This document shows, piece after piece, positions 36,220 to 64,000 of a DNA stretch of 64,000 nucleotides; position 1 is the stretch's first letter, and each line of letters opens with the position of its first letter. The notes beneath the pieces were generated by a model. It was not told the origin of the DNA, did no database searches, and saw only the letters and a program-made list of their open reading frames with translations. The stretch is taken from the IMG/VR virus record IMGVR_UViG_3300032285_004054, positions 154,401 to 218,400 of that record; one strand, written 5' to 3'. The translations under genes were made by a program, and so were the position numbers.

Positions 36220-36314
36220 TGGTACTGGGTGTGGGAATCGAACCCACGCTCGGCCCTCATCTAGGGCGCCACGATTATAAGTCGTGCGGTGCTCTCCAAT
36301 TACACTAACCCAGT
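36220..36314 (-). tRNA. Atypical long-arm tRNA with UAU anticodon (reads Ile AUA)
   Basis: Acceptor ACTGGGT/ACCCAGT, loop CTTATAA, ~22-nt variable region with GCCCT/AGGGC stem, T-arm GTGGG-TTCGATT-CCCAC, CCA. Confidence 0.82.
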
Positions 36315-45854: not shown

Positions 45855-46025
45855 CCCTCTAGGATTATACCTACAACTAGAGGGTATTAATTTGTTTGAC
45901 CGGGGTGGTTAATCCATCCTGATGCACCGGTTGATAAAGGCCTTTTAGAGCAACCTAGTCACGCGCACGTACGGTAGCTCTTTCGATCGAGCCTGCGAAC
46001 GGTCAAAATGTTTTAAAGGCCTAAG
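45855..46025. ncRNA. Candidate structured non-coding RNA
   Basis: GC-rich and ORF-free; TTTGACCG/CGGTCAAA closing helix plus internal stems. Confidence 0.4.
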
Positions 46026-46043
46026 CCATCATAGTCCTCCATA

Positions 46044-46247
46044 TTAATATCGTCCATGTCTCTTATCATAGGTAGCAAAAGGATCAGAGTCTACAATGGT
46101 TACCAGGACCCAGGCCGCTATACAATTCCAAAAGGTATAATGAATATTGGTATGGAATAGATAATTGATTGCCCAGATACCGAGCCAGATGTCTAGAACT
46201 CGATAGATGATATAGTAGATGCCTCGTACTAGTTCGTTCCGTTCCAT
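46044..46247 (-). CDS. Small membrane protein
   Basis: Likely start MERNELVRG; two hydrophobic segments. Confidence 0.5.
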   Translation of the reverse strand: MERNELVRGIYYIIYRVLDIWLGIWAINYLFHTNIHYTFWNCIAAWVLVTIVDSDPFATYDKRHGRY

Positions 46248-46412
46248 ATTACTTCCTCTTCTTACCTGCGTCCGATCGTTGGGCACGATAGGCTCCTACC
46301 TTAGATCCCTTTGGTACTCCGGCCGATAGTTGAGTACGAAGATACTTGGCCGTATTATAACGAACCAATGATCCACCTTTACAGATTTTGTTCTTTGTTG
46401 TTGCCATACAGA

Positions 46413-46610
46413 TTAGATATTATAGGCGTTATCGATAACGGCAAGGTAATAACCATCTAGATCTACCTCCCACCTATCTACCTTTGTATTCTTTACTAGG
46501 TTATGAACCTTATACCTATCATCATTAGAGTAGATATTGACAATGACCTCCTTGTCTAGCTCCTCCTCTGGTACCTCTGAGAGCTTATTCTTTAGATCCC
46601 TATAGGTCAT
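46413..46610 (-). CDS. Hypothetical early protein
   Basis: MTYRDLKNKL, similar to 48012-48203 (MTYKQLLNEL). Confidence 0.6.
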   Translation of the reverse strand: MTYRDLKNKLSEVPEEELDKEVIVNIYSNDDRYKVHNLVKNTKVDRWEVDLDGYYLAVIDNAYNI

Positions 46611-46814
46611 TTAATTAGTAAAGTAGGTAGGGTTGGCTCGGAAGGCTGGAGTAGGTTTAGTAAGCTGGGAATGCTTTACTGAATCCTTTCCGAGATAATA
46701 GACACCAATGATGGCGTAGAGGACAATGTTACAGGTAACATAAGTTATACAGAATAGCTTATAGGTATCCCAGATAGCTTCCTTGAGACGATTAGAGGTT
46801 ATAGTAGAGCTCAT
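46611..46814 (-). CDS. Small membrane protein
   Basis: One TM helix. Confidence 0.5.
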   Translation of the reverse strand: MSSTITSNRLKEAIWDTYKLFCITYVTCNIVLYAIIGVYYLGKDSVKHSQLTKPTPAFRANPTYFTN

Positions 46815-46986
46815 ACTTGTAGTTATTAATGTTGTTGTTGTTTGACATACGCCTCAGCCATCCATCCTGGGTAGTTGATTGTATGTGGTTTAGAAGAAGA
46901 GAAGGCTTCCTCTCTACGGAGTACCCGAAGATATTAAAGAAAGCTTCTAGAGGGTTCTTAATGAATGTCTTGATCTTATTCTTCAT
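46792..46986 (-). CDS. Hypothetical early protein
   Basis: MKNKIK start 6 nt after the -10 of TTGCCG-17-CATAAT. Confidence 0.6.
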   Translation of the reverse strand: MKNKIKTFIKNPLEAFFNIFGYSVERKPSLLLNHIQSTTQDGWLRRMSNNNNINNYKYELYYNL

Positions 46987-47026
46987 ACGAGTATTATGAA
47001 TGCTTTGGTTGGAACCGGCAACTACT

Positions 47027-47155
47027 TTATCGATCAAACGATTTAAATGATTGGCGGTTATAGTTCTTCTTATTCTTAAAGGCCTTCTGACCCGGGGCCC
47101 AATGCCGCCGGGTCTTAATCTCCTTTAGAGAGATGGTAAATGCTTTCGTCTTCAT
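47027..47155 (-). CDS. 42-aa basic peptide
   Basis: MKTKAFTISLKEIKTRRHWAPGQKAFKNKKNYNRQSFKSFDR; own promoter TTGCAG-17-TACTAT. Confidence 0.6.
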   Translation of the reverse strand: MKTKAFTISLKEIKTRRHWAPGQKAFKNKKNYNRQSFKSFDR

Positions 47156-47196
47156 ACTACTAATAGTAGAAGCTTATAGAGGCACCTGCAAGTATC

Positions 47197-47361
47197 TTAT
47201 AGAGCCTCTACCGCTCTCTTCATACTATCTATCTCCATGACGACGTCGGAGTAGGCTACTACTAGCTCTTGGATCTGCATATCCTTCTGATAGATTTGAT
47301 CCTTGAGGACGGCTATGAGCTTCTCCATCTCTTCGATCTTGTTTTGTAGGTCTGTTGTCAT
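47197..47361 (-). CDS. Small coiled-coil protein
   Basis: MTTDLQNKIEEMEKLIAVLKDQ... (54 aa); ATGA overlap with the upstream gene. Confidence 0.6.
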   Translation of the reverse strand: MTTDLQNKIEEMEKLIAVLKDQIYQKDMQIQELVVAYSDVVMEIDSMKRAVEAL

Positions 47362-47648
47362 TTTGTTGTAGGTGGTTCTTGGCCGGGATTACCATCCGTC
47401 CTCCAGGTACTATAGATGCCTTCATTGAGGGCGTCGATATTGGCGTAGTTGTGGATCAGATCGTAGTCATGCTTGAACTGTAGCGTACCCCAAACCAGAA
47501 CCAGAGCTACCCAGAGGGCTAGGATCAATGGCCAGATACGAAGGTAGAGCCTATCTACAAACCTTCTTAGACGCCTCAGTTGTACTTCGATCTCAACTGA
47601 GATAGGATACCAATATGTCCATTTGAGCTGTTGGGTCTTGGAGAACAT
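47358..47648 (-). CDS. Membrane protein
   Basis: TM segment IWPLILALWVALVLVWG. Confidence 0.55.
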   Translation of the reverse strand: MFSKTQQLKWTYWYPISVEIEVQLRRLRRFVDRLYLRIWPLILALWVALVLVWGTLQFKHDYDLIHNYANIDALNEGIYSTWRTDGNPGQEPPTTK

Positions 47649-47809
47649 AATCCTTTTAATTCATCATTGTGTTCTGGGTAATGCATACCCTATAAAGCTT
47701 CTCCATGGCGGCCAGGTACTCCTCATCGACTCCCATGAGCCTGGCCGCCATTTGTCGCATGCTATTCATCTCTTCTTCAGAGATGGAGTCTAAAGCGTTC
47801 TCCATTATC

Positions 47810-48007
47810 TTATTCGGTTACAATCTCGTAGGTAAGGGACTGGATAGCAAACCCATAGGCGTCGGCGATGGCGTCGGCCAGATCCTCTTCGAGGTTGCAG
47901 CTATCAGGGAACTCAAACTCCAGATCGACTGGAAGGTCACAAAGGTCCTCTTCATTATCGACGACCCAATAGATGTCGGTTACTTTGATCTTGTTCAGTA
48001 GTTCCAT
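47810..48007 (-). CDS. Acidic hypothetical early protein
   Basis: 65 aa, tightly packed. Confidence 0.6.
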   Translation of the reverse strand: MELLNKIKVTDIYWVVDNEEDLCDLPVDLEFEFPDSCNLEEDLADAIADAYGFAIQSLTYEIVTE

Positions 48008-48011
48008 AGTC

Positions 48012-48203
48012 TTAGATTCCGTAGGAGGTTAATACGAGGTAGAAATGATCGGGGTCGAGAACGTCATTGGCGTCATCGGTAGATACTTCGGCGTGATTGA
48101 TTGAGCAGAAGTCATCACGATCAGGATCATAGACGGTGACTGTGTCTTCAAGACGCTCTTTAGGAAGCTTCTTAAGCTCGTTGAGGAGTTGTTTGTAGGT
48201 CAT
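48012..48203 (-). CDS. Hypothetical early protein
   Basis: 63 aa. Confidence 0.6.
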   Translation of the reverse strand: MTYKQLLNELKKLPKERLEDTVTVYDPDRDDFCSINHAEVSTDDANDVLDPDHFYLVLTSYGI

Positions 48204-48208
48204 AAGGG

Positions 48209-48457
48209 TTAGGCGGTTACTTGTTTGTTCTTTAGTTGTTCGATCTCGGCTTTAGAGCTGCTATACCCATCATTGATAGCCTCCTGAAGGGTACGTCCGT
48301 AGTTGAAGTATCCGCTGCGATCCATCTCCAGGTATGTTTGAATGGATCCGAGGGTGAAGGCGTATCTGTATTCCTTATTACCTCTGAGTGTCTCAAGCTC
48401 CAGAATCAGATCTACGAGCTCCTTGACGGTTCTATCTACTGTGTTCTTATTTTTCAT
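48209..48457 (-). CDS. Hypothetical early protein
   Basis: MKNK start; promoter TTGTAG-17-TATACT-6-ATG. Confidence 0.65.
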   Translation of the reverse strand: MKNKNTVDRTVKELVDLILELETLRGNKEYRYAFTLGSIQTYLEMDRSGYFNYGRTLQEAINDGYSSSKAEIEQLKNKQVTA

Positions 48458-48473
48458 ACGATCAGTATAAGGG

Positions 48474-48674
48474 CTAGAGGTCGGAACTACAAGCTTCTTC
48501 TGCTGGCAACCCTAGAACAATCTCGTTATACTTGCTATGGAATACCTCCTGGATCTGATCTACTAGATTGAACATAATATAGGCCTTATCATTAGCCCCG
48601 CTACTATATTCATTCTCAAGATCTTTGAGGTAGTCGGAGATGAATGCGATGAATTCTTCGTTCTTATCTTTCAT
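48474..48674 (-). CDS. Hypothetical early protein
   Basis: TTGAGG-17-CATAAT-6-ATG. Confidence 0.65.
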   Translation of the reverse strand: MKDKNEEFIAFISDYLKDLENEYSSGANDKAYIMFNLVDQIQEVFHSKYNEIVLGLPAEEACSSDL

Positions 48675-48705
48675 ATAATGATTATGATCGGGTTGGAAGG
48701 AAACC

Positions 48706-48903
48706 TCAAGCCAAGAATTTGCCGAATGTCTCCATGCTCAGGTAGTATCGCCTCTGAACGGCCTCAGGCACCCTCCAGAAGTCAGAATCAGGTCCATCGC
48801 ACTTATCATACTCTTTCATCGCTTTCTTGGCTTCATTCATAGCTTCGAAGAAGTCTCGAGCCTTTAAGACGGCTTCCATGTCGTACTTGATCTTATTTTT
48901 CAT
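48706..48903 (-). CDS. Hypothetical early protein
   Basis: TTGACC-17-TATACT-6-ATG. Confidence 0.65.
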   Translation of the reverse strand: MKNKIKYDMEAVLKARDFFEAMNEAKKAMKEYDKCDGPDSDFWRVPEAVQRRYYLSMETFGKFLA

Positions 48904-48921
48904 ACGATCAGTATATAGGGT

Positions 48922-49113
48922 TCAGTCCTGAAGGTCAATGATAGAATCTGTAATTCCTTCCATACGTTCCTGTTGGGAATCCTCGACAGCTCCATAGAAG
49001 TACTCCTCATAATGGGCTTCTACTTCGGCTTTGGTAATATCAATGCCTTGATCCTTTAAAGCATCAATAACGTCTTGAATTTCAGAGTCAGCGATTTCAA
49101 TCTCAATCTTCAT
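48922..49113 (-). CDS. Acidic hypothetical early protein
   Basis: 63 aa. Confidence 0.6.
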   Translation of the reverse strand: MKIEIEIADSEIQDVIDALKDQGIDITKAEVEAHYEEYFYGAVEDSQQERMEGITDSIIDLQD

Positions 49114-49117
49114 ATGT

Positions 49118-49267
49118 TTATTCAGCGGTTAGGAATTTGATGTTGATATAACGGCGTAGACCTCTTGGTTTATTCTTCTCTGACATCATCGCCAGTCCTC
49201 CGACGATTGAACGAATGATCCAGATCTTACCCTGGTCCTCTATGTGCATTCCTTTTCTTATTTTCAT
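49118..49267 (-). CDS. Small basic early protein
   Basis: MKIRKGMHIEDQGKIWIIRS (49 aa); TTGCAG-17-TATACT-6-ATG. Confidence 0.6.
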   Translation of the reverse strand: MKIRKGMHIEDQGKIWIIRSIVGGLAMMSEKNKPRGLRRYINIKFLTAE

Positions 49268-49367
49268 ACATTCAGTATAAGGGAATTGAAAAGGAACTGC
49301 AAGCCTGGAAGAGTTGAAAAATAAGAAACGTCTCTATCCAGGCCTGCAGCAACCCTTCCCAAAAGTC

Positions 49368-49745
49368 TCAGTACCTAGGCACCACGATGGTGGGCTGTGG
49401 GGCGGTAAAATACGCTGGGGAATAATAAGCAGGGTTAGCATACGTCGGTACGTATCCTCCACATCCATAGGCTGGTACCGGGACGGGGGCAGCATATGCT
49501 GGGGCGGCCAGAGCTCCGGCGACGCCTAAACCGAAGAGCGTCCAACCTAGGCCATTAGGGATGCCAGTTCCACACCAGCCACCTCCTCCCCCATAGCCAC
49601 ATCCCCCGCGGTAGTATCCTCCATTACCGCAACCCCCGCCCCATCCTCCACCACCGCGATAGCATCCCCCATTGCCGTTATAATAGGCTTGGGATGTACT
49701 AACGAGAGCTGTAATAAGGAGTAGGGATAGAATGATCTTTTTCAT
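49368..49745 (-). CDS. Exported Gly/Cys/Tyr-rich protein
   Basis: Signal peptide MKKIILSLLLITALVSTSQA, GGC repeats, hydrophobic helix, Pro/Tyr tail. Confidence 0.65.
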   Translation of the reverse strand: MKKIILSLLLITALVSTSQAYYNGNGGCYRGGGGWGGGCGNGGYYRGGCGYGGGGGWCGTGIPNGLGWTLFGLGVAGALAAPAYAAPVPVPAYGCGGYVPTYANPAYYSPAYFTAPQPTIVVPRY

Positions 49746-49746
49746 A

Positions 49747-49938
49747 TTATTGATTGTAGTTAGAATTGGCTGATTGTGCAAGCTCCTCATAGTGTTCAAT
49801 TACAAAGAGGTATTCATCTTTGGTTAGACCGGCGACGATTCGGGCCTGGGGATCGAGCATATTGTATCGACCGCCAGCTCGGACCTTCTCATAGGCGAGC
49901 CAGTCGTTGATTTGATCTTTGGTAAAGTCCATTGTCAT
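49747..49938 (-). CDS. Hypothetical early protein
   Basis: Likely start MTMDFTKD. Confidence 0.55.
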   Translation of the reverse strand: MTMDFTKDQINDWLAYEKVRAGGRYNMLDPQARIVAGLTKDEYLFVIEHYEELAQSANSNYNQ

Positions 49939-49942
49939 AGTC

Positions 49943-50170
49943 TTAGGCAATGCGTAACATAATGGTACCTTCTTCATCGAGGATCGAGCGCCATTCAAAG
50001 CCCTCGGCCTTCAACTTAGCAATCATCCGGCCGGCTGGTGGGTGGCTATTGTTCAGACGGAAGATCGTTCCGATTGCTGACGAACGCCAGGGATAGGTGG
50101 TCGTATTAAAAGGACGACCTGGCTTACGCTTACCTCGAACATTGATGGACTTGATTTTATTGTGCTTCAT
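49943..50170 (-). CDS. Basic protein (AT-hook-like RKPGRP)
   Basis: 75 aa. Confidence 0.55.
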   Translation of the reverse strand: MKHNKIKSINVRGKRKPGRPFNTTTYPWRSSAIGTIFRLNNSHPPAGRMIAKLKAEGFEWRSILDEEGTIMLRIA

Positions 50171-50238
50171 TGTATTGGATTGTATTTGGGTTTAAAAAGT
50201 GGGAGACCCCAGGGCTCGCTGGGATCTCCCTATGATTC

Positions 50239-50571
50239 TTACTTAGCCTTCCCCTCAACCGGCATAGGAGCCTTAGCCTTAGGAGCGGCCTTCTTCTTAG
50301 CCGTCTGGATCTCCTCCTTCAGAGCCTCGACAACGGTCTCTACCGTCTTCTGAGCAGTCTTCTTAACAGCGCCCTTCCCGGTAAAGGTACGCAGGAGGTT
50401 CTCCAAGGAGCCGTACTTCTCGATCTTCTTCTTGAGGTTGGATCCGAAGCAGGTGAACGCGTTACCGGTTACCGTGCACTCGATGTAGTTCGTCGGAAGA
50501 ACTCCGAACTGGTCGAAGTAACCGAGCTGATAGGCGATGACGTCGTCGTTGATGATGTTGTTGTTTTTCAT
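50239..50571 (-). CDS. Basic protein with CxxTG motif and histone-like tail
   Basis: Start MKNNNII after an A/C-rich leader; weakly similar to the N-terminal domain of 29629-30240. Confidence 0.6.
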   Translation of the reverse strand: MKNNNIINDDVIAYQLGYFDQFGVLPTNYIECTVTGNAFTCFGSNLKKKIEKYGSLENLLRTFTGKGAVKKTAQKTVETVVEALKEEIQTAKKKAAPKAKAPMPVEGKAK

Positions 50572-50651
50572 TGTTGGGTTTGTTTTTGGGTTTTGGTTGT
50601 TACTGCTGTACTGATTGTACTTCTTCATTGTGGCTCCGATCCTTCGGAACC

Positions 50652-50861
50652 TCAAGCTTTTTCATCCAGGAATTCCTGAACCTGTTCTTCCAGGATAGGA
50701 TCCTGAATAGGATTCCCGTCTGTATCCCGGATCTCAAAATCAATGATCTTTCCCTTGGCGTTGGAATACTCATTGACAACGATGGATCCGTAGCGTGGGA
50801 CCTCATCGATAAAATAGGTGTCGAGAATAGTCTCGGTGTGTTCGTGGGTTGTAATTGTCAT
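50652..50861 (-). CDS. Acidic hypothetical early protein
   Basis: TTGAGG-17-CATAAT-6-ATG. Confidence 0.65.
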   Translation of the reverse strand: MTITTHEHTETILDTYFIDEVPRYGSIVVNEYSNAKGKIIDFEIRDTDGNPIQDPILEEQVQEFLDEKA

Positions 50862-50898
50862 ACGAGCATTATGGATGGATTGGAAGGAAACCTCAAGC

Positions 50899-51174
50899 TT
50901 AAACCAATCCTACAAGAGCCTTAAAGGTCTGATCGGATGGACGCTCGGTAGCAAACCAGGTATGGGTAGTATAATTGCCAATATCTACACCGAGATCTTG
51001 AAGGTCTTCACCAATAATAACATCCATAAGCTTCCATCCTTTAACGGCCTGATCTTTAAAAGCCTCTCGGATGATTACTTGCTTGTAAGGATTAATCTGA
51101 TACATCTCATAATCATCAATGAAAAGGATGTATTTAGCTGTCGATGAGTTTAGGGCGATGTTCTTATTTTTCAT
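50899..51174 (-). CDS. Hypothetical early protein
   Basis: TTGAGT-17-CATACT-6-ATG. Confidence 0.65.
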   Translation of the reverse strand: MKNKNIALNSSTAKYILFIDDYEMYQINPYKQVIIREAFKDQAVKGWKLMDVIIGEDLQDLGVDIGNYTTHTWFATERPSDQTFKALVGLV

Positions 51175-51192
51175 AGATTCAGTATGTAGGGA

Positions 51193-51384
51193 TCAGAGAA
51201 GGAACTCAAGCTGTTTCTTCAGCTCCTGTGCCGTCTCTATATCAATGACGATGATTTGATTGCAGGAAAACCCCTTGAGGGTCAGCTCCAGGACCTCCTT
51301 ATGGCCTTCGTATGGGTTCTGGCCATGACGTACGGCTACGCCTTGGTAGATAGATCCGGTGATTGGTTCTTCTGTATTTTTCAT
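51193..51384 (-). CDS. Hypothetical early protein
   Basis: TTGCCT-17-CATAAT-7-ATG. Confidence 0.6.
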   Translation of the reverse strand: MKNTEEPITGSIYQGVAVRHGQNPYEGHKEVLELTLKGFSCNQIIVIDIETAQELKKQLEFLL

Positions 51385-51421
51385 AGATTGGATTATGGAT
51401 TGGAAGGAAAGAACAGGCAAG

Positions 51422-51691
51422 CTATTCCTTCTCCCAAAGATAAGCCCTTTCAGTCAGATCTTGGATGAAGCAGCTGAATTCGCCATTCATACAAGCATTC
51501 TCAACGGCCAAAGCAGCCTCTTCCAACGCTGGATCCTCAGTATAAAGGACATCGATGGCTTCTGTATACTCTGGCTTATCCATAAAACCTTTCAGTTCTT
51601 GGAGGGCCTTATAGACGCCAGAGGTAAGCTCTTCGTAGCGTCCGGCGATAGCGATGATGGCTTCAGGGTTCAGGGTGTTTTTATTTTTCAT
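51422..51691 (-). CDS. Hypothetical early protein
   Basis: TTGTCT-17-CATAAT-6-ATG. Confidence 0.65.
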   Translation of the reverse strand: MKNKNTLNPEAIIAIAGRYEELTSGVYKALQELKGFMDKPEYTEAIDVLYTEDPALEEAALAVENACMNGEFSCFIQDLTERAYLWEKE

Positions 51692-52056
51692 GCATTCATT
51701 ATGGCAGCAGAGGGAAGGAAAGACAAGGGAATCTTTTTTTATTTCCGGCTTGATGGTTCCAATAGGAGCCTATAGAATGAAAGGATAATAAAGAAGAGGT
51801 CGTTGAGCAGGGACCTAGGAGAAGAAAACAGCTCGAAGAGGGAGTAACATCCTGCCACGTTTGTTAGCACACCCTGCCCCTATATACTAACATCGTTGTT
51901 AAATCTTCCTAGAATAGGGTAACTAACTTCTCTGTTAGATGTTAGTAGAATTTCCTGCTTGCAACAATCAGTAAGTACCGGATAATGGAAATATAGTTCA
52001 GGAAATCTCGGATAGTTCAGTTGAACATTCCTAGAAGTAAGCACGGAAAGTACTAG

Positions 52057-54222: not shown

Positions 54223-54566
54223 CCGATCAGCTTCTCCAGTAGCATTCTACTGTTAACCTTAATATCACACTCCAAGGCGTCTCTAGATTCAATAGCCTTA
54301 AAGTACTCTTCGTCATTATCAATCAGTTCCTGACCTAACGTCTTCTTAACATCTGGATTGAGCTTTGATTTGATCAGTTCCAGGATTGGCTCCACATCTT
54401 TATCTGATAGATGGAGGGTAACTTCGGAGCCATCATATACGGAACCATAATTGAATTCCAGCTTTAGAGTAACCGGAGGACATGGACTATAACCAAATGG
54501 TTGACCAGTAAAGTCGGAGAAGTAACTTGCCTCCTCTATCTGTTCAGGAACGATTATCTTTTTCAT
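54219..54566 (-). CDS. Hypothetical protein
   Basis: 115 aa, coupled to the second queD. Confidence 0.55.
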   Translation of the reverse strand: MKKIIVPEQIEEASYFSDFTGQPFGYSPCPPVTLKLEFNYGSVYDGSEVTLHLSDKDVEPILELIKSKLNPDVKKTLGQELIDNDEEYFKAIESRDALECDIKVNSRMLLEKLIG

Positions 54567-55129
54567 AGTTTTCGATCATCATATTCAACAACACCCTTTT
54601 CGTCTCTATAAAGCTCAATTAGGTATTTGTTTCCAATATAGAAGTTAGAACGTTCATCTTGAGAAATAGAATCTCTATTACAATCGGTATAACAATTAGG
54701 CGTCTCATATAGACGAACATTCTCAATCCAAAGATTAGGATACTTGTTAAAGAGAATATCCATAGCCAGGAATACTTCTTTAGCAATATTCTCTACCGAT
54801 GGATTGCAGTAATTACCTGGACCATTCAATGTCATAATCCAGAGCTTGGTACCTAAATCATTAACAGCCTTGATGAGTGTCCTATCATGACAATTGAGAA
54901 TAGCTCCATGATCGAGCTTATCATCAATCCATTGACATCCTACTCTCTTAATCTCCTTGAAGTCTACAGCATATCCGATCTCTTCAATTGTATCAAAGCC
55001 AAAGGTTAGTTCATAAAGATATGTATGCCCATGAACATGAAAGCATTTCATCCGCTCATTCATTACCCGATGCATTACATCGAACGATCCCTTTCTAGTA
55101 ATAGTCTGTTTAGTACTCATACTCTTCAT
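54563..55129 (-). CDS. queD: Second QueD/PTPS-family enzyme (canonical H...CxxxHGH)
   Basis: MHRV...KCFHVHGHTY, VDFKEIK, DH, NPSVENIA, LYETP. Confidence 0.88.
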   Translation of the reverse strand: MKSMSTKQTITRKGSFDVMHRVMNERMKCFHVHGHTYLYELTFGFDTIEEIGYAVDFKEIKRVGCQWIDDKLDHGAILNCHDRTLIKAVNDLGTKLWIMTLNGPGNYCNPSVENIAKEVFLAMDILFNKYPNLWIENVRLYETPNCYTDCNRDSISQDERSNFYIGNKYLIELYRDEKGVVEYDDRKL

Positions 55130-56953: not shown

Positions 56954-58160
56954 TCAGGGTACATAATCTACCTCCTCGACACGTCTTACCTCAAGTCCAA
57001 AATCAACTCTAATAGGCTTCCCTACTACATGATTGCTTTCATCTATTGCTCTTACAATAATACAACAAGGATCCTTTAGGTCCATCTGAACCATTCCAGC
57101 ATCCATAATATAAACAGATTCGTTTTCTAAACCACAATCAGGAGCATGATCTACTCTTACTGCTTTCATGATGATCTAGGAAGGTATACTGCACTAATGT
57201 TATCAGACTCTATACCAAGAGATCTTACTTCCTGGTACTCTCCATCGTACCAATGTTTGTCTTGTTTTGGATAAAAGCTAAGGCCAGTAACAATTTCAAT
57301 TTTCTTTACTTCGTCATATCCAGTTTCATATCCATCCACGAGAACAATTTGCTCAGGATCATACTTTTGTAGTTGCTCTAATAGTTCTTTAACTTTCATA
57401 TTTTCCAGGTTGTTTTGCCTCCAAAGTGACCACAGGTTTCACAAGAGCCTTTATCAGACTCGTAATCATCATATTGAAGACAATAGAGAAGATCATCTAC
57501 AGATGTTTGGTTCTTCTTAATAGCTTCCTTTAGTTGACCAAGTAAATAATCTATCAGTTCTTCGTTCTGTTCAAGATACTCTCCTTCTTTTAGCCACTCT
57601 CCATTTACACACCATGCTGGACCAAAGCAGGACTTTTCATCTTTAATGATTATATATTTGTGTTCGTCAGACATTAGAGTGATGGCTTATTTGTTCCAAT
57701 ATCTTCAGCTACATAAGGACATTGCATCTTAATCCATTTGCTAGAAGGATATTCTTTAAAAGATACATAACCATCTGTACCCCAGGGATAACCTTTTGAA
57801 TAGTAGGTCTGCTGAACCTCTCCATTAATGTTTAGTCTTTGAATCTTATAGTAATGTACCTGAGGTCGATCGAAATAAGCACATCCTGTAAAAAACAAAA
57901 TAGGTACAAGTGGTATAGCTATTATAAAAGCTATTACTTTTACCTCAAACCAGAATGTTTTAGATTTGTTAGTCATACTACTCAACCTTCTCACCAGGAA
58001 TCTTTCCAATGTCTAAGAAGACAGAATGAGGATGAGTATCTTTGTAGGTGACTAGATCAATACCAAACACATTAAAGACATTATTGGACTTACTAGCACA
58101 ATAAACATCTGCATCAGGATCTTGAAGCTCGAGAGCATGAATGAGTTCTTTTACTGTCAT
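56954..58160 (-). other. Coupled operon of five small hypothetical ORFs (56954-57169, 57166-57399, 57396-57674, 57674-57976 with lipobox FTGC, 57978-58160)
   Basis: ATGA overlaps; upstream TTGACT..TAGAAT promoter. Confidence 0.6.
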
Positions 58161-58197
58161 ATGATAATTCTATATGATTATCTTTTTGAGTCAAGCA

Positions 58198-58620
58198 CTA
58201 AATCTTATTCAGTAAAGAAGCTGATGAGTTTAGGTCCTGTTGACCCCAATCAACTAAAAGAGCATTGACACCAGCTTGTTCAGCACAGATGCACACCTCA
58301 ACACTATCATCAATATGAAGGGTACTCTTAAGGTTCAAAAGAGTCTGAGTCTTTGATCTGCCTTCTGTACTAATAACAGACTTGATAGGGAGGTTGTAGA
58401 GCTTAATCAGATCATGACACTCTGGAATATGTTCAGGCATTCTAAATGTTACAACATGAATCTCAAAACCCTCTTCATGCTTTTCTCTAACAAAGTCATG
58501 GACTCTCTTTACAGGTTCTGGATCGAAGCCAGATGATATCCAAAGAGCTCCAGAACCATATTGATATGCTGGATCCTCAAACAGAGTGTCGTCAAAGTCG
58601 ACTGTGATTACTGGCTTCAT
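58198..58620 (-). CDS. HAD-superfamily phosphatase
   Basis: VDFDDTL motif I, VTFR motif II, HIDDS motif IV. Confidence 0.8.
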   Translation of the reverse strand: MKPVITVDFDDTLFEDPAYQYGSGALWISSGFDPEPVKRVHDFVREKHEEGFEIHVVTFRMPEHIPECHDLIKLYNLPIKSVISTEGRSKTQTLLNLKSTLHIDDSVEVCICAEQAGVNALLVDWGQQDLNSSASLLNKI

Positions 58621-58736
58621 TTTGTAAAAAGGTTTCTAATCAATTTATAGCTCACATAGGATGTAATTACAATAAAAAAGATAAACAGAAATATATCTGG
58701 TTCAGTTATATACATATCCTATATGCTCTAGAAGGA

Positions 58737-61243
58737 CTAGTCAAGAGAATCTTCAGCAACTTCTGGTTTAAAGTCTTTAGGAATGTTATCATCTAACCAC
58801 TCTTTTGGTCTCTCTGTAAACTTTCCTTCTTCTCCTAACAGACTAAAATAAGCACATTCCAATCCAATAAGCATACCATACATATACTCATTGCAGTTGT
58901 AGTTGCCATTCTGCTTTTGGATGTCAATAAGACCTTTAATCTTTTCAGCTGCTTCTTTCATAATGTTATAGGTAAAGTAGTCTTTGTACCATCATAAGCT
59001 ACATGGTATACTGGAGTTGCTTCTCTAATAACTCTAACACCACCACAGACATTATCTTCATCTCTAATTGGAACAACTTCACAGTCTGGTCCTTTATATG
59101 GAACATAAGCAATGTCTTTTCCAAAATGAGGATCAATGTTTGGAGGTACTGGAACAGTTGGAAGAGTTCTCCAAATGTTTTGATTCTTTATGATCTCTTC
59201 ATTCTGCTTAACAATCATTTCAAGCAGTTCAATAATCTTTTCTTCTTTCTTCATATTAATTTCTAGGATCAGTCCAACTCTGAATAGGATAAGGTGTATT
59301 GAGAATCATTTCAACAAAAGCTTTTCCTTTTTCAGTAAGTGTAAGTTGATCAGCATCAGAATCATGTTCAGCAAATCTCACTAGGATATGATCTTTTAGT
59401 AATTGACTAGCAGCATCATATTCTGCCTTATTCCATCTGTTGATCATATACCTTGGCATATAGTGAGCTTTGAGTAGAATTTCAATCTTTAATGGACTGT
59501 GTAGGTTTCTGCTAATCATATTTTTACCAGGCTGGAAGGTTTTTACTAATGTTCCATCCTTTTGCTTCATATTTCTTTTCAAGTCTTTCTAGGATAGGCT
59601 TTAGAAAGTCATTGAGTTCTTTGCTTGTACAATTCTCTTCACAGCTCAGATAATAGAACATACCCTTATAATATGTCTCCCAATGATATGCTTTACTTCT
59701 ACTCAGTTGACCAATCATTGTAGATGGTAGACCTGTAGCTGTATAGAAAATTTCTTTCTTCTTCATACTATGATGCTAATCTATTTCCTGGTTTGTATCC
59801 AGCTGCTTTTAGAACTTCATCTCTAGCTTCCAATAACTTCTCAGATGGTAAAAAATAAGGCTCAACACAGCTTAGAAGCTTATCAATAGCTCTGCCCAAA
59901 GATTCTTTCCTTTCTCCATAAATGTGTCTGTGGAGTTCTTTAGCCATTCTATCTTTAATAAGGTCTTCATACATTCCTATGCTAGACTCTGACCATTGGC
60001 TATCTATATCTTGGTAATACTCTGTAAAGAATTCAAGTTTAGCTCTATGTCTAATCCTGCCACTATTGGATATCTCCTTAGTGTATTGGATCATATCTGT
60101 AAAGTCTTTGTCATTCATATTATTGATCTTTATATCTTAAACCTTATCATCATAAGCTTCATCATATCCATTTCTCCAAGCCTCTTCTTTAATCTCTTCA
60201 ATCCTTTCATTAAAGACATTCAAAAGATAATCAATAAAAAGCTTTGCTGACTCTTCTACATCTCCTTCAAACTTTAATTTGTCTTCATTAAAGTCAAACT
60301 TACCAACTTCTTTATGTTCTTTGTTAAAGAATGTTACAATGTGATTAGGTTCAAAAAGAGATAGAGCATTATCAGTACAAATAACTTTATCCCAATTAGA
60401 TGTATCAATCTCTAGTTCTTTCATATTAGTTTACTGTTACCTTTTGATACCCTATCTCCTCTATAACAACTCCACCCTTTAAGAGTCTGTGTTTATATCT
60501 TTGATTAGAGAATGATTTTAGCATAGCCCAAGCCCCTTCTGCAAAGGACTTCTGCATATCACAGAATCCCATCACTCTACTCCACTTATCAACAGGAGGT
60601 TCCATATAGAACTGAATATCATAGTATGATTTTTTCATTTCAAGAAGTATAGCACAGTAAAGTAAAGTGTCCAGACAAAAAAAGCACAGATGAAGCAAAA
60701 GATTCCAAGTAATGCTAAACCAAAGTCTCCAAAAAGAGAACCATCACTTGCATCATTTAGGTTTTTACCACCAAAGATAGCAAGAGCAATGGATAGGATA
60801 ATAGGAATCCAAATAGATGAGAAAGAGATTGTGAGTGCTAAAATCATAAATTAAATGCCTCATTAACTCTCTCTTCAAACTTCTTAACAGCTGGGAGGAT
60901 TACTTCTTGTACAACTTGTGATTCTGGATGAACATCTTTAGCTAACATACTCCCAAATTCCATTGCAGCAAATACTACTTTATTTCTAATAACAGAAAGC
61001 TCATCATGTTCTTCTAGTCCAGTTAGAACCTCTTTTAGGAAATTTTTAATCTCTTCTCTTTTCATATTAATTAAAATAATTCTGTGCTCCAAACAAACTA
61101 TATACCCAATGATAATATGGTGTAAAAAACTTTACAAGCCAAAAACATATACCAAAGATAAATGGAACAACTAAAGCAATTATTACAAAGATTGCAATTG
61201 CATGTATTGCTACTAATAGATTTTCAATTGTCTTTGTGCTCAT
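58737..61243 (-). other. Run of small hypothetical ORFs (58737-58961, 58958-59254, 59256-59582, 59524-59766, 59768-60118, 60137-60424, 60426-60638, 60635-60847 membrane, 60844-61065, 61067-61243 membrane)
   Basis: Tightly packed, co-oriented; no family recognised. Confidence 0.6.
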
Positions 61244-61417
61244 ATTAATGTTTAAAGAAAGTATATGTCAAATAGCCCCAAGTTACAAGCATAAAAAATA
61301 CAAATACTGAAAAGCCTATAATCAGAGTCTTATGAATCTCTCTAACAAGCTGAAGAACTGATATATTAAAATCAGATTGTTTTGTATTAAATTCAGCTTG
61401 TGATGATTTGAATGTAT

Positions 61418-61603
61418 CTAGTTTAATTTTGCAATTTTTTCACAAATATTGTTGTATTTGTTACAAAGCTTACTTTCTGCCCTATCAAGCTTATTCAACT
61501 CTCTCTTTATAAGAGTATATTCTTTTTTAACACCCTTGAGCTGTTTATCAATACAACCAAGAGTAAATTTTAGCTTTTTGATTTGTTCTTTCTTATTTTT
61601 CAT
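61418..61603 (-). CDS. Coiled-coil early protein
   Basis: TTGAAG-17-TATACT-6-ATG; MKNK start. Confidence 0.6.
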   Translation of the reverse strand: MKNKKEQIKKLKFTLGCIDKQLKGVKKEYTLIKRELNKLDRAESKLCNKYNNICEKIAKLN

Positions 61604-61624
61604 ACATTCAGTATATAGGCTTCT

Positions 61625-61810
61625 TTAGGGCACTTCAAGCCTTTTCTTCTTCTCAATAGTTGTGTAAATGAACATCTCTTTTGGTATCCAAAATTGATAC
61701 CATCTCTTAGTTACTGGTGCTCTTTGTATAGCTTGAAAATCATATACATTATAAGTTGAAACCCTAGGCATCAACCATTCATCTTTCTTTAGTCCTATAG
61801 AGTCATTCAT
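61625..61810 (-). CDS. Hypothetical protein
   Basis: Likely start MNDSIG. Confidence 0.5.
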   Translation of the reverse strand: MNDSIGLKKDEWLMPRVSTYNVYDFQAIQRAPVTKRWYQFWIPKEMFIYTTIEKKKRLEVP

Positions 61811-61811
61811 A

Positions 61812-62498
61812 TTAAATCTCCTCAAGTTCTTTAGGTTTAATAGGTGCTGTAACCTTTATACTATATCCATCACTAATGAAGTTACTGCAAATAATCTCTG
61901 ACTTCTCTCCTCTTGGCAAATTAGGCATAGCTTTATCAATGCTCTTCCAAATATCACTCCAATCAGCTGTGTCCTTATTCTCAATAGCATTAGCAATCTT
62001 CTTCCAAAGTTTCTTAGGAACTTTAAAGAGCTTATACTCAATTGCTCCTTGAACTACAGGCAATGGAACACCAGTGTGACTAAAAGGCTTATCAAACCTT
62101 CTAGTGTAATCAGCCCATCCATCATTGTCCTTAAAAGCTTTGTACCTTCCTAGAACCTTATAAATCTCATAGGCCATTGTAGCATCTCCTACCTTCTCCT
62201 GGTTATAGATGCCATAGGATACATTAGGATTGTTCTCTAAATCTGTACCCTTGAACAGATACTTCCTAGCACAATTATGAATCTCTTGTTTATCTTCATA
62301 GGCTAATGAATATCCAAATGCTTCATCAAGGGCATAATCAATCTGACCAAGTTTTAATCTCTGAAAAACTTCTAAAGACTTCAACAGAGTTGGAATGTGT
62401 CTCTCATCAAACTCAATAGTAACAGGCTGTCGAACTTTCTCTTTATAGTTCTTAGCAGCCTTCTTAAGATTCTTTTTAGCTTGTACTTTAGTGGTCAT
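61812..62498 (-). CDS. Hypothetical early protein
   Basis: 228 aa; TTGAGG-17-TATTAT promoter. Confidence 0.65.
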   Translation of the reverse strand: MTTKVQAKKNLKKAAKNYKEKVRQPVTIEFDERHIPTLLKSLEVFQRLKLGQIDYALDEAFGYSLAYEDKQEIHNCARKYLFKGTDLENNPNVSYGIYNQEKVGDATMAYEIYKVLGRYKAFKDNDGWADYTRRFDKPFSHTGVPLPVVQGAIEYKLFKVPKKLWKKIANAIENKDTADWSDIWKSIDKAMPNLPRGEKSEIICSNFISDGYSIKVTAPIKPKELEEI

Positions 62499-62532
62499 TG
62501 TGTCTTTATAATATATGGATCTTTAGGACACC

Positions 62533-63376
62533 TCAAGCTTCTTCTTTTGTATAATCCTCTTCAATGTTCTCATTGGTTTCCATATCCCACATCTCATCAA
62601 TGTTAATATCAAACCCATCACTTTGAAAAGCTCTATCTCTTGCAATGTCTTTAATGAGCTTATTAGCTTCATCAGTAATCTCTCCATCACTGAGACTATC
62701 ATCAACCTCCATCTCAGTCTCTACCCAGATCTTTACTTCAGCTGATACATAGATTGTTCTCATTTATTTCTCCTTTTTAACAGGTGTAATTTCACTCTGA
62801 ACAATATCTGGAAACTTTTTACCAAGCATTGGCTTTAGAATGTTTGGTATTCTGTCGAGCTTCTTCATCTCATCTCTCTCCTTAAGATACTTCAAACAGA
62901 TTTGAGGTACAAACCTACCAAGATCCTCTACTTCAGCATTCAAGTTAATATAATCAGAGACTTCATTCCACTGATTCATAATCTTTAGAGCTTCTTCTTT
63001 CCATTGTCTCAACTCATTATTTACATCTCTCAGTTCATTTATAATCCTCTCATCCTCTTGAGTTTTGACCCACAGAGCATCTCTTTCTAGCTGAACATCC
63101 TTTAGAGTCTTTGTCAATACAGACACAGACAACTCCAAATCAATATCATCATTCATAATCTTATTCTAAAATATGATTCTTAATCATCTCAAAAAGAGAA
63201 TCAATACTCTCTTTAACTGAGCCTTCAATCTTAATTGCTGTCTTTAAAACATTACCTTCAAAGCCTTTCATTGGATCATTAGGATCTTTAGGAACTGGCA
63301 AAGCACTATCTCCATCCCAATAAATGAGACTGATGAGATTGTTATTCCTATCAATTGATATTTTATAATTGTTCAT
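62533..63376 (-). other. Three-gene early operon (62533-62763, 62764-63156, 63161-63376)
   Basis: TTGACA-17-TAGACT-6-ATG at its head. Confidence 0.62.
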
Positions 63377-63480
63377 TATTACAGTCTATATGCTTTAGGA
63401 GAAGGTGTCAAGAAAAGAATTTTTACTAGAATCTATTGTTTTTACTGATGAGTAAAAATTCATGTTTTCAGCAAAAACAA

Positions 63481-63732
63481 TCAATAGCAGCAATCACACT
63501 TCTCAACAGTTGGATCAATATCTGCAATGACATTTCTAGCCTTTCTCAATGCTTGATCCAAATGATCCTTATTGATCTCATCCTTCTGTGCTACAATGAC
63601 TAGGTGCTTTAGAGCTTTCATGAGATCATCTCTTTCTAGTTTCAAAGCATCAAACTGTTCAACAAAACTCTTCATCTCTTGGACATCTTCTTTGATTTGT
63701 TTATGATCTTCTTTAATAAAATTGTGAATCAT
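63481..63732 (-). CDS. Coiled-coil early protein
   Basis: TTGAAT-17-TAGACT-6-ATG. Confidence 0.62.
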   Translation of the reverse strand: MIHNFIKEDHKQIKEDVQEMKSFVEQFDALKLERDDLMKALKHLVIVAQKDEINKDHLDQALRKARNVIADIDPTVEKCDCCY

Positions 63733-63741
63733 TTTTACAGT

Positions 63742-63942
63742 CTATAGAGATTCTAAGGACAATTCAAGCTTTTTAATTTTATCCCTTAACTCTTTATTGA
63801 CATCTTCTTGTTCATTAAGCATCCTCTCTAGTTCCCAGACTTTAGCTTCTAATGAATCTCTTTCTAGTTCTACTTTTTCTAGTCTGTCTTCAAACCACTC
63901 GAGTCTAAACTCTGGGTCATCATAGTCATAAGGGCAATTCAT
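63742..63942 (-). CDS. Coiled-coil early protein
   Basis: TTGACA-17-TAGAAT-6-ATG. Confidence 0.62.
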   Translation of the reverse strand: MNCPYDYDDPEFRLEWFEDRLEKVELERDSLEAKVWELERMLNEQEDVNKELRDKIKKLELSLESL

Positions 63943-64000
63943 TTTTACATTCTATATGCTTTAGGAGGAGGTGTCAATAAGATTCTTCACCACAGCATCA

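What the first reader, a model, noticed from the sequence alone, without database searches (positions are those of the whole stretch)
58601..64000. CG-dinucleotide desert
Seen by manual reading: no CG from 58601 to 62430 (~3.8 kb) and only three to the window end (62431, 62856, 63900), all within TCGA. The base composition would predict on the order of 100 or more. The equally early-type genes at 46-52 kb are CG-rich, and depletion appears to ramp up over ~57-58.6 kb. Inference: strong local selection or mutation against CG. Options are restriction or methyl-deamination in a host with a CG-containing site, first-injected DNA, sequence-context bias of the deazaguanine modification, or a module acquired from another lineage.
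Basis: partly seen in the sequence, partly recalled or inferred. Interest (0 to 1): 0.75.

Follow-up and report, generated by a model that had tools for sequence, protein, structure and literature searches.

The report
CpG-free early genes in a phage
An uncultured freshwater T4-like phage and its relatives have rewritten one block of about 35 small, promoter-dense early genes so that it holds almost no CG dinucleotides while the rest of the genome is normal, which points to an unknown CG-directed barrier at the very start of infection.

Summary
The window is the last 64 kb of a 218.4-kb IMG/VR contig of a divergent T4-like myovirus from freshwater. The desert continues at the contig start, so it spans at least 10.5 kb and about 37 co-oriented small ORFan genes.

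It is not a chimera: independent assemblies reproduce it. It is not a foreign module: one gene family occurs in CG-free and CG-normal versions that differ by synonymous recoding.

Arg frequency is unchanged, but 78 of 81 Arg codons are AGR. C-ending codons before G drop from 29% to 1.4%. CG is the only strongly avoided word.

Every copy of a conserved sigma70-type promoter cassette lies inside the single desert (6 of 6 here, 9 of 9 in a second complete genome). About 25 relatives show the same link, and per-gene CG content is bimodal. Surviving CGs follow a reverse-complement-symmetric flank rule (TCGA tolerated), which suggests the CG is read on duplex DNA.

Best reading: selection purges CG from immediate-early genes to evade a CG-directed barrier. 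The agent is unknown. I found no published precedent. Interest is high.

The parts
58621..64000 (-). Core of the CG desert inside the window: about 18 tightly packed small genes (58-228 aa), all on the - strand, with their intergenic DNA. It continues beyond the window at the contig start (L001 1-3486).
   Evidence: 3 CG where about 146 are expected; the per-gene table gives CG 0 or 1 for every gene. ORFans with no Pfam or PHROG function.
56954..58620 (-). Downstream ramp: six small - strand genes with partial CG depletion, o/e rising from 0.18 to 0.45 with distance from the core.
   Evidence: 3/17, 1/6.5, 2/8.4, 3/9, 3/7.1, 3/6.6 observed/expected; the surviving CGs are almost all WCGA on the coding strand.
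63949..63977 (-). Canonical early-promoter cassette (sigma70-type TTGACA, 17-nt conserved spacer, TAGAAT). The -10 ends 6 nt before the ATG of gene 63742-63942.
   Evidence: The same 29-38 nt cassette occurs in about 25 other viral contigs.
63383..63411 (-). Canonical early-promoter cassette, abutting the ATG of gene 63161-63376.
58716..58744 (-). Variant cassette (TTGACT, 17 nt, TAGGAT). It is the most downstream copy, and the ramp begins after it.
61242..61271 (-). Further sigma70-like promoter of the same architecture. Others lie at 63163-63192, 62508-62536, 61610-61638 and 58167-58194.
   Evidence: at least 14 of the 33 desert genes called from ATG starts have an ATG-abutting promoter.
61812..62498 (-). 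Largest desert gene (228 aa, function unknown): 1 CG against 21 expected. Orthologues in L050 and L051 (87-89% aa identity) have 3 CG. A 67%-identical homologue in L052 (9944-10654) has 24 CG.
   Evidence: AlphaFold model unusable.
62430..62433 (.). Surviving CG inside TCGA. The other two survivors are at 62855-62858 and 63899-63902.
54563..55129 (-). Context, not part of the desert: QueD-like 6-pyruvoyl-tetrahydropterin synthase with normal CG.
   Evidence: PF01242, 89.5 bits

Best explanation
SHOWN. The region is the hyperplastic early-gene module of an uncultured freshwater T4-like myovirus. It holds about 37 small co-oriented ORFan genes, many with their own copy of a conserved sigma70-type promoter cassette that abuts the ATG. 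These genes have been recoded at synonymous sites so that CG is almost absent, while the rest of the genome keeps CG at o/e about 0.85. The trait is kept across a whole clade and follows a gene's context, not its ancestry.

INFERRED. The purge is maintained by purifying selection. During the first moments of infection, before the early proteins have acted, CG in these genes is the target of a CG-directed barrier that interferes locally with their expression. Later genes are expressed once the early proteins have neutralised the barrier, so they can keep CG.

The flanks of surviving CGs obey a reverse-complement-symmetric rule in all three codon phases: TCGA is tolerated, and RCGY contexts and CCGG are purged hardest. 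Candidates are a host DNA-binding or base-flipping defence protein, or a mark carried on the incoming DNA. It is less likely to act on mRNA. The identity of the agent is not known.
For: **Synonymous, dinucleotide-specific purge**
- Arg is 3.4% of residues in the desert and 3.3% elsewhere, but 78 of 81 Arg codons are AGR (54% elsewhere).
- One NCG codon remains.
- C3/(C3+T3) before G is 0.014, against 0.289 elsewhere, and is normal before A or T.
- CG is the only strongly avoided word: o/e 0.10 against 0.86, with the next word, CATG, at 0.56.

**Link to the cassette-driven gene class**
- All 6 canonical cassettes of the 218-kb genome and all 9 of a second complete genome lie inside the single desert.
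- The 1 kb downstream of 62 cassette copies in about 25 contigs has a median CG o/e of 0.12.
- In L052 each desert block starts at a cassette.
- T4-type late promoters precede 15 genes, none in the desert.

**Discrete gene classes**
- Per-gene CG o/e is bimodal.

**Context, not ancestry**
- The 228-aa family occurs with 1-3 CG in deserts and with 24 CG in a cassette-less island. At conserved residues the differences are synonymous.

**Ongoing maintenance**
- Deserts persist in genomes that share only about 2 kb of nucleotide similarity.
- Only 1 of 20 population variants to C or G creates a CG (about 4 expected), and that one makes TCGA.

**Duplex-level reading**
- Enrichment among survivors is T 1.79 at -1 and A 1.73 at +1, and T 1.34 at -2 and A 1.22 at +2.
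- The rule holds in each codon phase, p from 2e-4 to 2e-13.
- Density relative to normal genes is TCGA 0.35, one-sided contexts 0.10, VCGB 0.043.
Against: - No CG-reading factor was identified, and the host is unknown.
- Many CG-normal genes also have ATG-abutting sigma70-like promoters, including replication genes and the GC-rich small-gene array at window 46-52 kb. Early transcription by host polymerase alone therefore does not predict the purge.
- A few cassette copies face CG-normal genes (L056:3710, L074, L085).
- Some CG-free genes lie behind partly CG-containing genes on the same strand (L086). That fits a per-gene effect, for example on RNA, better than a strict polar DNA roadblock.
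- The pooled CG profile rises symmetrically on both sides of cassette arrays, so no polarity is seen.
- Timing of expression is inferred from promoter type only, and no RNA run could be listed.
- Selection and a region-specific CG hypermutation cannot be separated from sequence alone, because every CG can be removed synonymously.
Confidence: 0.42

Rival explanations
1. RNA-level stealth. The early mRNAs avoid CG because an endoribonuclease or RNA sensor cuts or binds CG-containing single-stranded RNA. It could be a host toxin-type interferase that an early phage protein later inhibits, or the phage's own host-shutoff RNase from which its early messages must be immune.
For: - Depletion is per gene and bimodal.
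- CG-free genes can sit next to CG-containing genes on the same strand.
- At the desert-block edges in L052, CG does occur in terminator-like hairpins, where it would be base-paired.
- Precedents from established knowledge: T4 Dmd against RnlA/LsoA, and T4 RegB, which distinguishes mRNA classes by a 4-nt motif.
Against: - The flank rule of surviving CGs is reverse-complement symmetric at +-1 and +-2 in every codon phase. That is expected for a duplex reader and would be a coincidence for an RNA reader.
- Mirror contexts such as ACGA and TCGT are equally frequent in the pooled data.
- No known bacterial RNase has plain CG specificity.
Confidence: 0.2
2. First-entering DNA, T5/T7 logic. The desert is the leading end of the genome. 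It sits in the cell alone for a while and must lack targets of host nucleases until anti-restriction proteins are made.
For: - All desert genes point one way.
- Both complete ~220-kb assemblies (G000, G004) break inside the desert.
- The upstream edge is sharp and the downstream edge gradual.
- A published precedent exists for motif loss confined to the early-injected region (PMC12455610).
Against: - L052 has about 2.4 kb and 3.5 kb of CG-normal genes between desert blocks.
- G002, complete with assembly terminal repeats, has the desert internal.
- Depth is flat, with no 2x terminal-repeat step.
- The G000 contig ends exactly at the edge of a 52-nt repeat shared with other contigs, and the G004 join interrupts genes, so these are assembly breaks.
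- Run contigs show many alternative joints at cassettes.
- T4-type phages package by headful, without fixed ends (established knowledge; not verified here, and Terminase_6C was not detected).
- No restriction enzyme is known to recognise bare CG.
Confidence: 0.1
3. Region-specific hypermutation. CG is lost by methyl-cytosine deamination, or by transcription-associated deamination limited to the very highly transcribed cassette units, without selection on CG itself.
For: - TG and CA are raised in the desert: coding-strand TG 1.28 and CA 1.13, against 1.06 and 0.97.
- A duplex methyltransferase would give symmetric flank effects.
- All CGs can be lost without changing a protein.
Against: - No cytosine methyltransferase was found in the phage.
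- A host enzyme would act on the whole genome.
- Transcription-associated deamination is strand-asymmetric and not CG-specific.
- CGN Arg codons were replaced by AGR, a transversion that deamination does not produce, with Arg content unchanged.
- An o/e of 0.0-0.1 would need a loss-to-gain bias of more than 10-fold confined to single genes.
Confidence: 0.1
4. Modification-free window. Virion DNA carries a bulky CG-context modification that host RNA polymerase cannot read until early proteins act, so immediate-early genes must lack the modification site. The mark could be phage-made (for example a 7-deazaguanine derivative) or imposed by the host.
For: - The phage encodes QueC, QueD, QueF, a GATase-like protein and two glycosyltransferase-like proteins.
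- The duplex-symmetric flank rule fits a DNA-modifying enzyme.
Against: - No TGT/DpdA, no C5, N4, N6 or Dam methyltransferase, and no ThyA-family hydroxymethylase were detected.
- The Que genes sit near tRNA-Asn and tRNA-Tyr genes, so they may serve tRNA queuosine.
- Replication genes with normal CG must also be read from parental DNA.
Confidence: 0.08
5. Imported module or assembly artefact. The block comes from a lineage with no CG, or the contig is a chimera.
For: The region is mosaic. Some segments are 94-97% identical to segments of otherwise divergent contigs.
Against: - An independent IMG/VR contig is 100% identical across the left boundary.
- Logan contigs of run X1 match at 100%, including a piece spanning 58081-58782.
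- The same architecture occurs in two other complete genomes.
- CG-normal and CG-free versions of one gene family exist.
- No contig examined is CG-free across core genes.
Confidence: 0.03

Closest known systems
Motif loss confined to the early-injected region of T7-like and T5-like phages (e.g. Type I R-M motifs in Murciavirus, PMC12455610; the T5 first-step-transfer region)
   Same: A sequence word is avoided only in the variable, anti-defence-rich early part of the genome, while the same word is tolerated elsewhere. The logic is that early products disarm the host.
   Different: There the avoided word is the 6-7 nt site of an identified restriction system, and the region is defined by the physical order of DNA entry. 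Here the avoided word is a bare dinucleotide, the depletion is per gene with CG-normal genes interleaved, and nothing shows an entry order.
PeSL (promoter-early stem-loop) cassettes of T4-type phages (PMC2839356, PMC4122927)
   Same: Conserved early-promoter cassettes are repeated between small ORFan genes in a hyperplastic region. Gene order is shuffled between relatives at the cassettes.
   Different: Most copies here lack the upstream stem-loop. CG depletion is not a property of PeSL regions: the early half of RB49 has CG o/e >= 0.97 throughout.
CpG suppression of vertebrate RNA viruses and HIV-1, countered by the CpG-binding protein ZAP (established knowledge; general background in PMC2390760)
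   Same: Synonymous, dinucleotide-level removal of CG from viral genes as a way of staying invisible.
   Different: That system reads RNA in animal cells and affects whole genomes at o/e about 0.2-0.5. This one is in a bacteriophage, is confined to one gene class, is nearly absolute (o/e 0-0.1), and its flank rule points to duplex DNA. No bacterial CG sensor is known.
Genome-wide restriction-site avoidance and PAM depletion in phages (e.g. PMC4246573)
   Same: Selection against short words that host immunity recognises.
   Different: Those signals are genome-wide, concern 3-6 nt words that are usually palindromes, and are partial. Here the non-palindromic contexts of CG are purged as well, and only about 4-5% of the genome is affected.
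T4 RegB endoribonuclease and GGAG (established knowledge)
   Same: A short word separates temporal classes of phage messages in a T4-type phage.
   Different: RegB destroys early messages that carry the word. Here the early genes lack the word, and the symmetry of contexts argues for DNA.

Membership tests
PeSL cassette (T4-type phages) | Conserved sigma70-type early promoter repeated between small ORFs | tested here: met
   There are 6 canonical copies plus at least 8 variants in the desert, and about 70 copies in about 25 contigs.
PeSL cassette (T4-type phages) | Terminator-like stem-loop immediately upstream of the promoter | tested here: not met
   The MFE of the 55 nt upstream of 95 distinct copies has a median of -6.3, against -6.0 for random controls. 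Hairpin plus T-run occurs only at a few block edges, for example L052 before 11463 and 13122.
PeSL cassette (T4-type phages) | Acts as a breakpoint of gene gain, loss or shuffling between related phages | tested here: met
   Desert genes are shared with L052 in a different order, some at 94-97% identity. Alternative joints at cassette positions occur in four metagenome runs.
Early-injected-region restriction avoidance (T5/T7 type) | Region lies at the physical leading end of the virion DNA | tested here: inconclusive
   The contig ends fall in the desert in G000 and G004, but they are repeat-edge assembly breaks. The desert is internal in the terminally redundant assembly G002, and depth is flat. 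Only contigs, not raw reads, were available.
Early-injected-region restriction avoidance (T5/T7 type) | Avoided word equals the recognition site of a host restriction system | tested here: not met
   All 16 NCGN contexts are depleted 3- to 40-fold, and no longer word explains this. The host is unknown.
Early-injected-region restriction avoidance (T5/T7 type) | Uninterrupted site-free stretch | tested here: not met
   CG-normal genes lie between desert blocks in L052 and L086. In G000 itself the core is uninterrupted.
Methylation-driven CpG decay | A CG-methylating cytosine methyltransferase acts on the DNA | tested here: not met
   PF00145 and PF01555 are absent from the phage genome, and the control genomes were positive. 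Host enzymes are not testable.
Methylation-driven CpG decay | Excess of TG and CA matching the CG deficit | tested here: inconclusive
   TG and CA are raised. Synonymous selection predicts the same, and CGN to AGR replacement is not a deamination product.
7-deazaguanine DNA modification (Dpd-type, phage) | DpdA/TGT-family DNA transglycosylase | tested here: not met
   PF01702 gives no match in six frames at E <= 0.001, and the controls were 14 of 14 positive. Very divergent DpdA subfamilies could be missed.
7-deazaguanine DNA modification (Dpd-type, phage) | preQ0/preQ1 synthesis genes | tested here: met
   QueD, QueC, QueF and a GATase-like neighbour. QueE and FolE were not searched.
ZAP-type CpG avoidance | Synonymous CG suppression in viral genes | tested here: met
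ZAP-type CpG avoidance | Host sensor that binds CG in single-stranded viral RNA | not testable with these tools
   Host unknown. The symmetric flank rule argues against an RNA reader.
T4-type myovirus | T4-like replication and recombination genes and late promoters | tested here: met
   PolB, gp46/47-like, UvsW-like, UvsX-like and clamp loader. gp53-like baseplate and tail chaperone. TATAAATA lies 13-34 nt before 15 genes. PolB is only 34% identical to the nearest GenBank phage.

The most novel reading that the evidence does not exclude
Freshwater bacteria possess an as yet undescribed innate immune mechanism that recognises the bare dinucleotide CG on incoming DNA, or on nascent early RNA, within the first minutes of infection. 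It would be a prokaryotic counterpart of CpG sensing in animals. A clade of T4-like phages escapes it by keeping their immediate-early, counter-defence genes CpG-free until those genes' products switch the system off.
Probability: 0.3. Interest if true: 0.92.

Novelty: new variant of a known kind. Interest (0 to 1): 0.8.

Why it matters
Word avoidance in phage genomes is one of the few ways to read host immunity from sequence alone. Here the avoided word is a dinucleotide, the avoidance is almost absolute, and it is limited to one class of genes that can be recognised by its promoter. That gives three things:

- **A marker.** It is a clean computational marker for immediate-early or counter-defence genes in uncultured T4-like phages.
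- **A prediction.** It makes a strong, testable prediction that something in these hosts reads CG at the onset of infection. Nothing with that specificity is known in bacteria outside the Mollicute CpG methyltransferases.
- **Built-in controls.** Natural matched controls exist: the same gene occurs with and without CG, and the same promoter occurs with and without a purge. These make the question directly testable once a host is in culture.

If the agent proves to be a defence system, it would extend the CpG-sensing theme of animal innate immunity to bacteria.

Tried and rejected
- **Strand asymmetry.** In the G000 ramps the survivors looked strand-biased (CGA on the coding strand). With 280 pooled desert genes the bias vanished and the rule proved reverse-complement symmetric, so the template-strand idea was dropped.
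- **Polarity.** I expected CG to rise only downstream of the last cassette. The pooled profile rises on both sides.
- **All sigma70-driven genes CG-free.** Rejected: many CG-normal genes have the same ATG-abutting promoter architecture.
- **CpG-specific bis-intercalators as chemical defence.** Echinomycin and thiocoraline clamp CG steps on duplex DNA, but they favour A/T-flanked sites including TCGA (PMC4357703). That is the opposite of the tolerance seen here. DNA intercalators do act early on phage DNA (PMC13250531). I kept this only as a remote lead.
- **McrBC-type reading of methylated RCG.** It fits the stronger purge of RCGY, but CCG is purged almost as strongly, and cleavage would not be gene-specific.
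- **Host identification.** The cassette is absent from GTDB genomes and GenBank phages. There is no psbA. GMP-reductase homologues are all unnamed metagenome or phage sequences.
- **Function of desert proteins.** Pfam, PHROGs and the ESM Atlas gave nothing. The AlphaFold model of the 228-aa protein has pLDDT 40, so no fold search was run.
- **RNA evidence.** No RNA run was listed, and read laying was limited to one call on assembled contigs.
- **Literature.** Four full-text searches found no report of CpG-free phage early genes.

Full report
**Observation**

CG occurs at window 58590 and 58599, and then only at 62431, 62856 and 63900, each inside TCGA. Zero-order expectation is about 103 for 58601-62430 and about 146 for 58601-64000. 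GpC is normal there. The ramp at 57-58.6 kb and the CG-normal, GC-rich small-gene array at 46-52 kb are both real.

**Where the window lies**

The window is the last 64 kb of a single 218,400-bp IMG/VR contig. Over the whole contig this is the only such region, and it resumes at the contig start. Genome 213001-218400 plus 1-2900 holds 9 CG against 214 expected. With its partly depleted edges the desert spans at least 10.5 kb and about 37 consecutive small genes, all on the - strand.

The contig ends are assembly breaks:
- The last 52 nt are a flank plus promoter repeat that is shared with other contigs.
- Logan contigs of four freshwater runs show many alternative joints at these repeats.
- Some sequence may therefore be missing between the end and the start, and the desert may be larger than seen.

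**The organism**

The genome encodes a family-B DNA polymerase, gp46/47-like, UvsW-like and UvsX-like proteins and a clamp loader. It also encodes a gp53-like baseplate protein. T4-type late promoters (TATAAATA) lie 13-34 nt before 15 genes. The polymerase is only 34% identical to the nearest GenBank phage, and the runs that hold the sequence are freshwater metagenomes. It is an uncultured, divergent T4-like myovirus with an unknown host.

**Not an artefact**

An independent IMG/VR contig is 100% identical over 14.6 kb across the left boundary. Logan contigs of run X1 match at 100%, and one piece spans 58081-58782. Baseline depth is 23-33x on both sides, without a step.

**Nature of the depletion**

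Arginine is as frequent in desert proteins as elsewhere (3.4% against 3.3%), but 78 of 81 Arg codons are AGA or AGG. One NCG codon remains. At codon junctions, C is chosen over T before G in 1.4% of cases against 28.9% elsewhere, and normally before A or T. All three codon phases are therefore purged, as is the intergenic DNA.

In 280 pooled desert genes (100 kb) from about 30 contigs, CG has o/e 0.10 against 0.86 in 277 neighbouring normal genes. No CG-free word of 3-6 nt comes close. Per-gene CG o/e is bimodal, with a sharp peak at 0-0.1, a trough at 0.2-0.3 and a broad peak at 0.6-0.9. Median protein length is the same in both classes.

**Link to a promoter cassette**

A conserved element occurs six times in the 218-kb genome, always on the - strand and always inside the desert core. 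It consists of TTGACA, a conserved 17-nt spacer (CCTCCTCCTAAAGCATA), TAGAAT, then 6-9 nt and the ATG. At least 14 of the 33 desert genes called from ATG starts have this or a variant promoter abutting the ATG.

An exact-pattern scan found the cassette in 35 stretches of about 25 viral contigs. The 1 kb downstream of 62 copies has a median CG o/e of 0.12.

Two further genomes were read in full:
- G004 (225,756 bp, complete, 32% GC) shares only about 2 kb of nucleotide similarity with this genome. It has one desert, again across its contig ends. All 9 of its cassettes lie in that desert, and the upstream edge falls at the first cassette.
- G002 (140,531 bp, complete with assembly terminal repeats) has one internal desert of about 6 kb with cassette variants.

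In L052 each desert block begins at a cassette. Between the blocks lie CG-normal genes without a cassette.

There are limits to this link:
- Other genes with ATG-abutting sigma70-like promoters are CG-normal.
- A few cassettes face CG-normal genes.
- CG status sometimes changes from gene to gene within one strand.
- The pooled profile shows no polarity.
- Most cassettes lack the stem-loop that defines PeSLs.
- RB49, the phage in which PeSLs were described, shows no CG depletion.

**Context, not ancestry**

The largest desert gene (228 aa) has 1 CG here and 3 in two orthologues of 87-89% identity. A 67%-identical homologue in a cassette-less island of L052 has 24 CG. At conserved residues the differences are CCG to CCT, GCG to GCA, CGC to AGA and NNC|G to NNT|G.

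Desert genes are shared between contigs in different orders, some at 94-97% identity. Among 20 population variants that introduce C or G, one creates a CG (about 4 expected), and it creates TCGA.

**What reads CG**

Relative to normal genes, TCGA is at 0.35 of normal density. Contexts with T before or A after the CG are at 0.10, and the remaining contexts are at 0.043. ACGC, ACGT and CCGG are at 0.02-0.03. The flank preferences are reverse-complement symmetric: T 1.79 at -1 and A 1.73 at +1, then T 1.34 at -2 and A 1.22 at +2. They hold in each codon phase. An apparent strand bias in this genome's ramps disappeared in the pooled data. This favours a reader of duplex DNA over a reader of mRNA, at roughly 1-in-16 odds of coincidence.

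The phage has no detectable C5, N4/N6 or Dam methyltransferase, no ThyA-family hydroxymethylase and no TGT/DpdA. It does have QueC, QueD and QueF, which may serve its own tRNA-Asn and tRNA-Tyr.

**Interpretation**

Shown:
- One discrete, promoter-marked class of small, mobile early-type genes has been synonymously purged of CG.
- The trait is conserved across a clade.
- There is one such block per genome.

Inferred:
- Purifying selection against CG acts while these genes must function, before their products change the cell.
- The selective agent is a CG-directed barrier, probably one that reads duplex DNA and acts locally on expression.

Cleavage of DNA cannot explain a per-gene pattern in a genome with about 5,500 other CGs. 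The rivals are an RNA-level nuclease or sensor, first-entering DNA, region-specific hypermutation, a CG-context modification of virion DNA, and import from another lineage. Each is weighed in its own section of this report.

**Comparison and novelty**

The nearest known phenomena are the loss of restriction motifs from the early-injected region of T7- and T5-like phages (PMC12455610), PeSL-mediated shuffling (PMC2839356, PMC4122927) and CpG suppression in vertebrate viruses. None of them combines a bare dinucleotide, near-absolute depletion and restriction to one gene class of a bacteriophage. Four full-text searches found no report of it. I rate it a new variant of a known kind (sequence stealth against immunity), with a substantial chance that it marks an unknown CG-directed defence.

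Noticed in passing
whole genome; e.g. window 63949-63977, 589-1695 (UvsX-like): Across the genome, sigma70-like -10 boxes end 6-9 nt before the ATG, so transcripts would be leaderless. Only about 10-12% of genes have a Shine-Dalgarno-like motif at -18 to -4. This hints at a host with little Shine-Dalgarno use.
   Followed up: partly
window 2141-3070 (QueF), 54563-55129 (QueD), genome 30265-30909 (QueC, L089), L089:2184-2825 (GATase-like): There is a scattered preQ0/preQ1 pathway without a detectable DpdA/TGT. QueD lies about 2 kb from phage tRNA-Asn(GTT) and tRNA-Tyr(GTA), which are queuosine-type tRNAs. The pathway may therefore modify tRNA rather than DNA.
   Followed up: partly
window 46000-52000: A GC-rich (40-48%) array of small - strand genes has normal CG and its own promoter variant (CTTGAGG..TTCC..CATAAT abutting the ATG). 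Its composition is very unlike the rest of the 36%-GC genome.
   Followed up: partly
L001:1845-2279 (- strand; genome start, inside the desert): A 144-aa desert protein carries a type IV pilin N-terminal methylation motif (PF07963, 27.5 bits), so it is a pilin or pseudopilin-like early protein.
   Followed up: no
window 31909-32850: A GMP reductase (IMPDH/GMP reductase domain, E 3e-58) is conserved at 57-84% identity. The best 120 matches are listed, several on contigs of about 200 kb, so it is a clade-wide auxiliary metabolic gene.
   Followed up: partly
window 36220-36314: tRNA-Ile(TAT) is predicted at 95 nt, about 20 nt longer than its neighbours. It may hold an intron or insertion, or be a mis-call.
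   Followed up: no
L010, L013, L014, L028, L043, L046 (QueD-related contigs): Some relatives with 27-33% GC have a moderate CG deficit (o/e 0.39-0.47) over the 6-20 kb of each locus read, rather than a local desert.
   Followed up: no
pooled desert genes: CATG is mildly under-represented in desert genes (Markov o/e 0.56, against 0.83 in normal genes). In the CG-normal part of the genome, TCGA is the most avoided CG tetramer (zero-order o/e 0.65), the reverse of its status in the desert.
   Followed up: no
window 58001-64000 in runs X1, X2, X8, X14: Unitigs are 0.1-1.3 kb long with many alternative joints at cassette positions, and depth peaks at up to 395x on the cassette at 63801-64000. Co-existing strains and phages therefore carry different cassette orders.
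   Followed up: partly
window 7816-9069 and L089:2822-3520: Two glycosyltransferase-like proteins were found: one weak Pfam match below the curated cut-off (PF13524), the other just above it (PF13712, 31 bits). One sits between the DNA polymerase and the gp46-like gene. Their substrates are unknown, and DNA glycosylation is not excluded.
   Followed up: no
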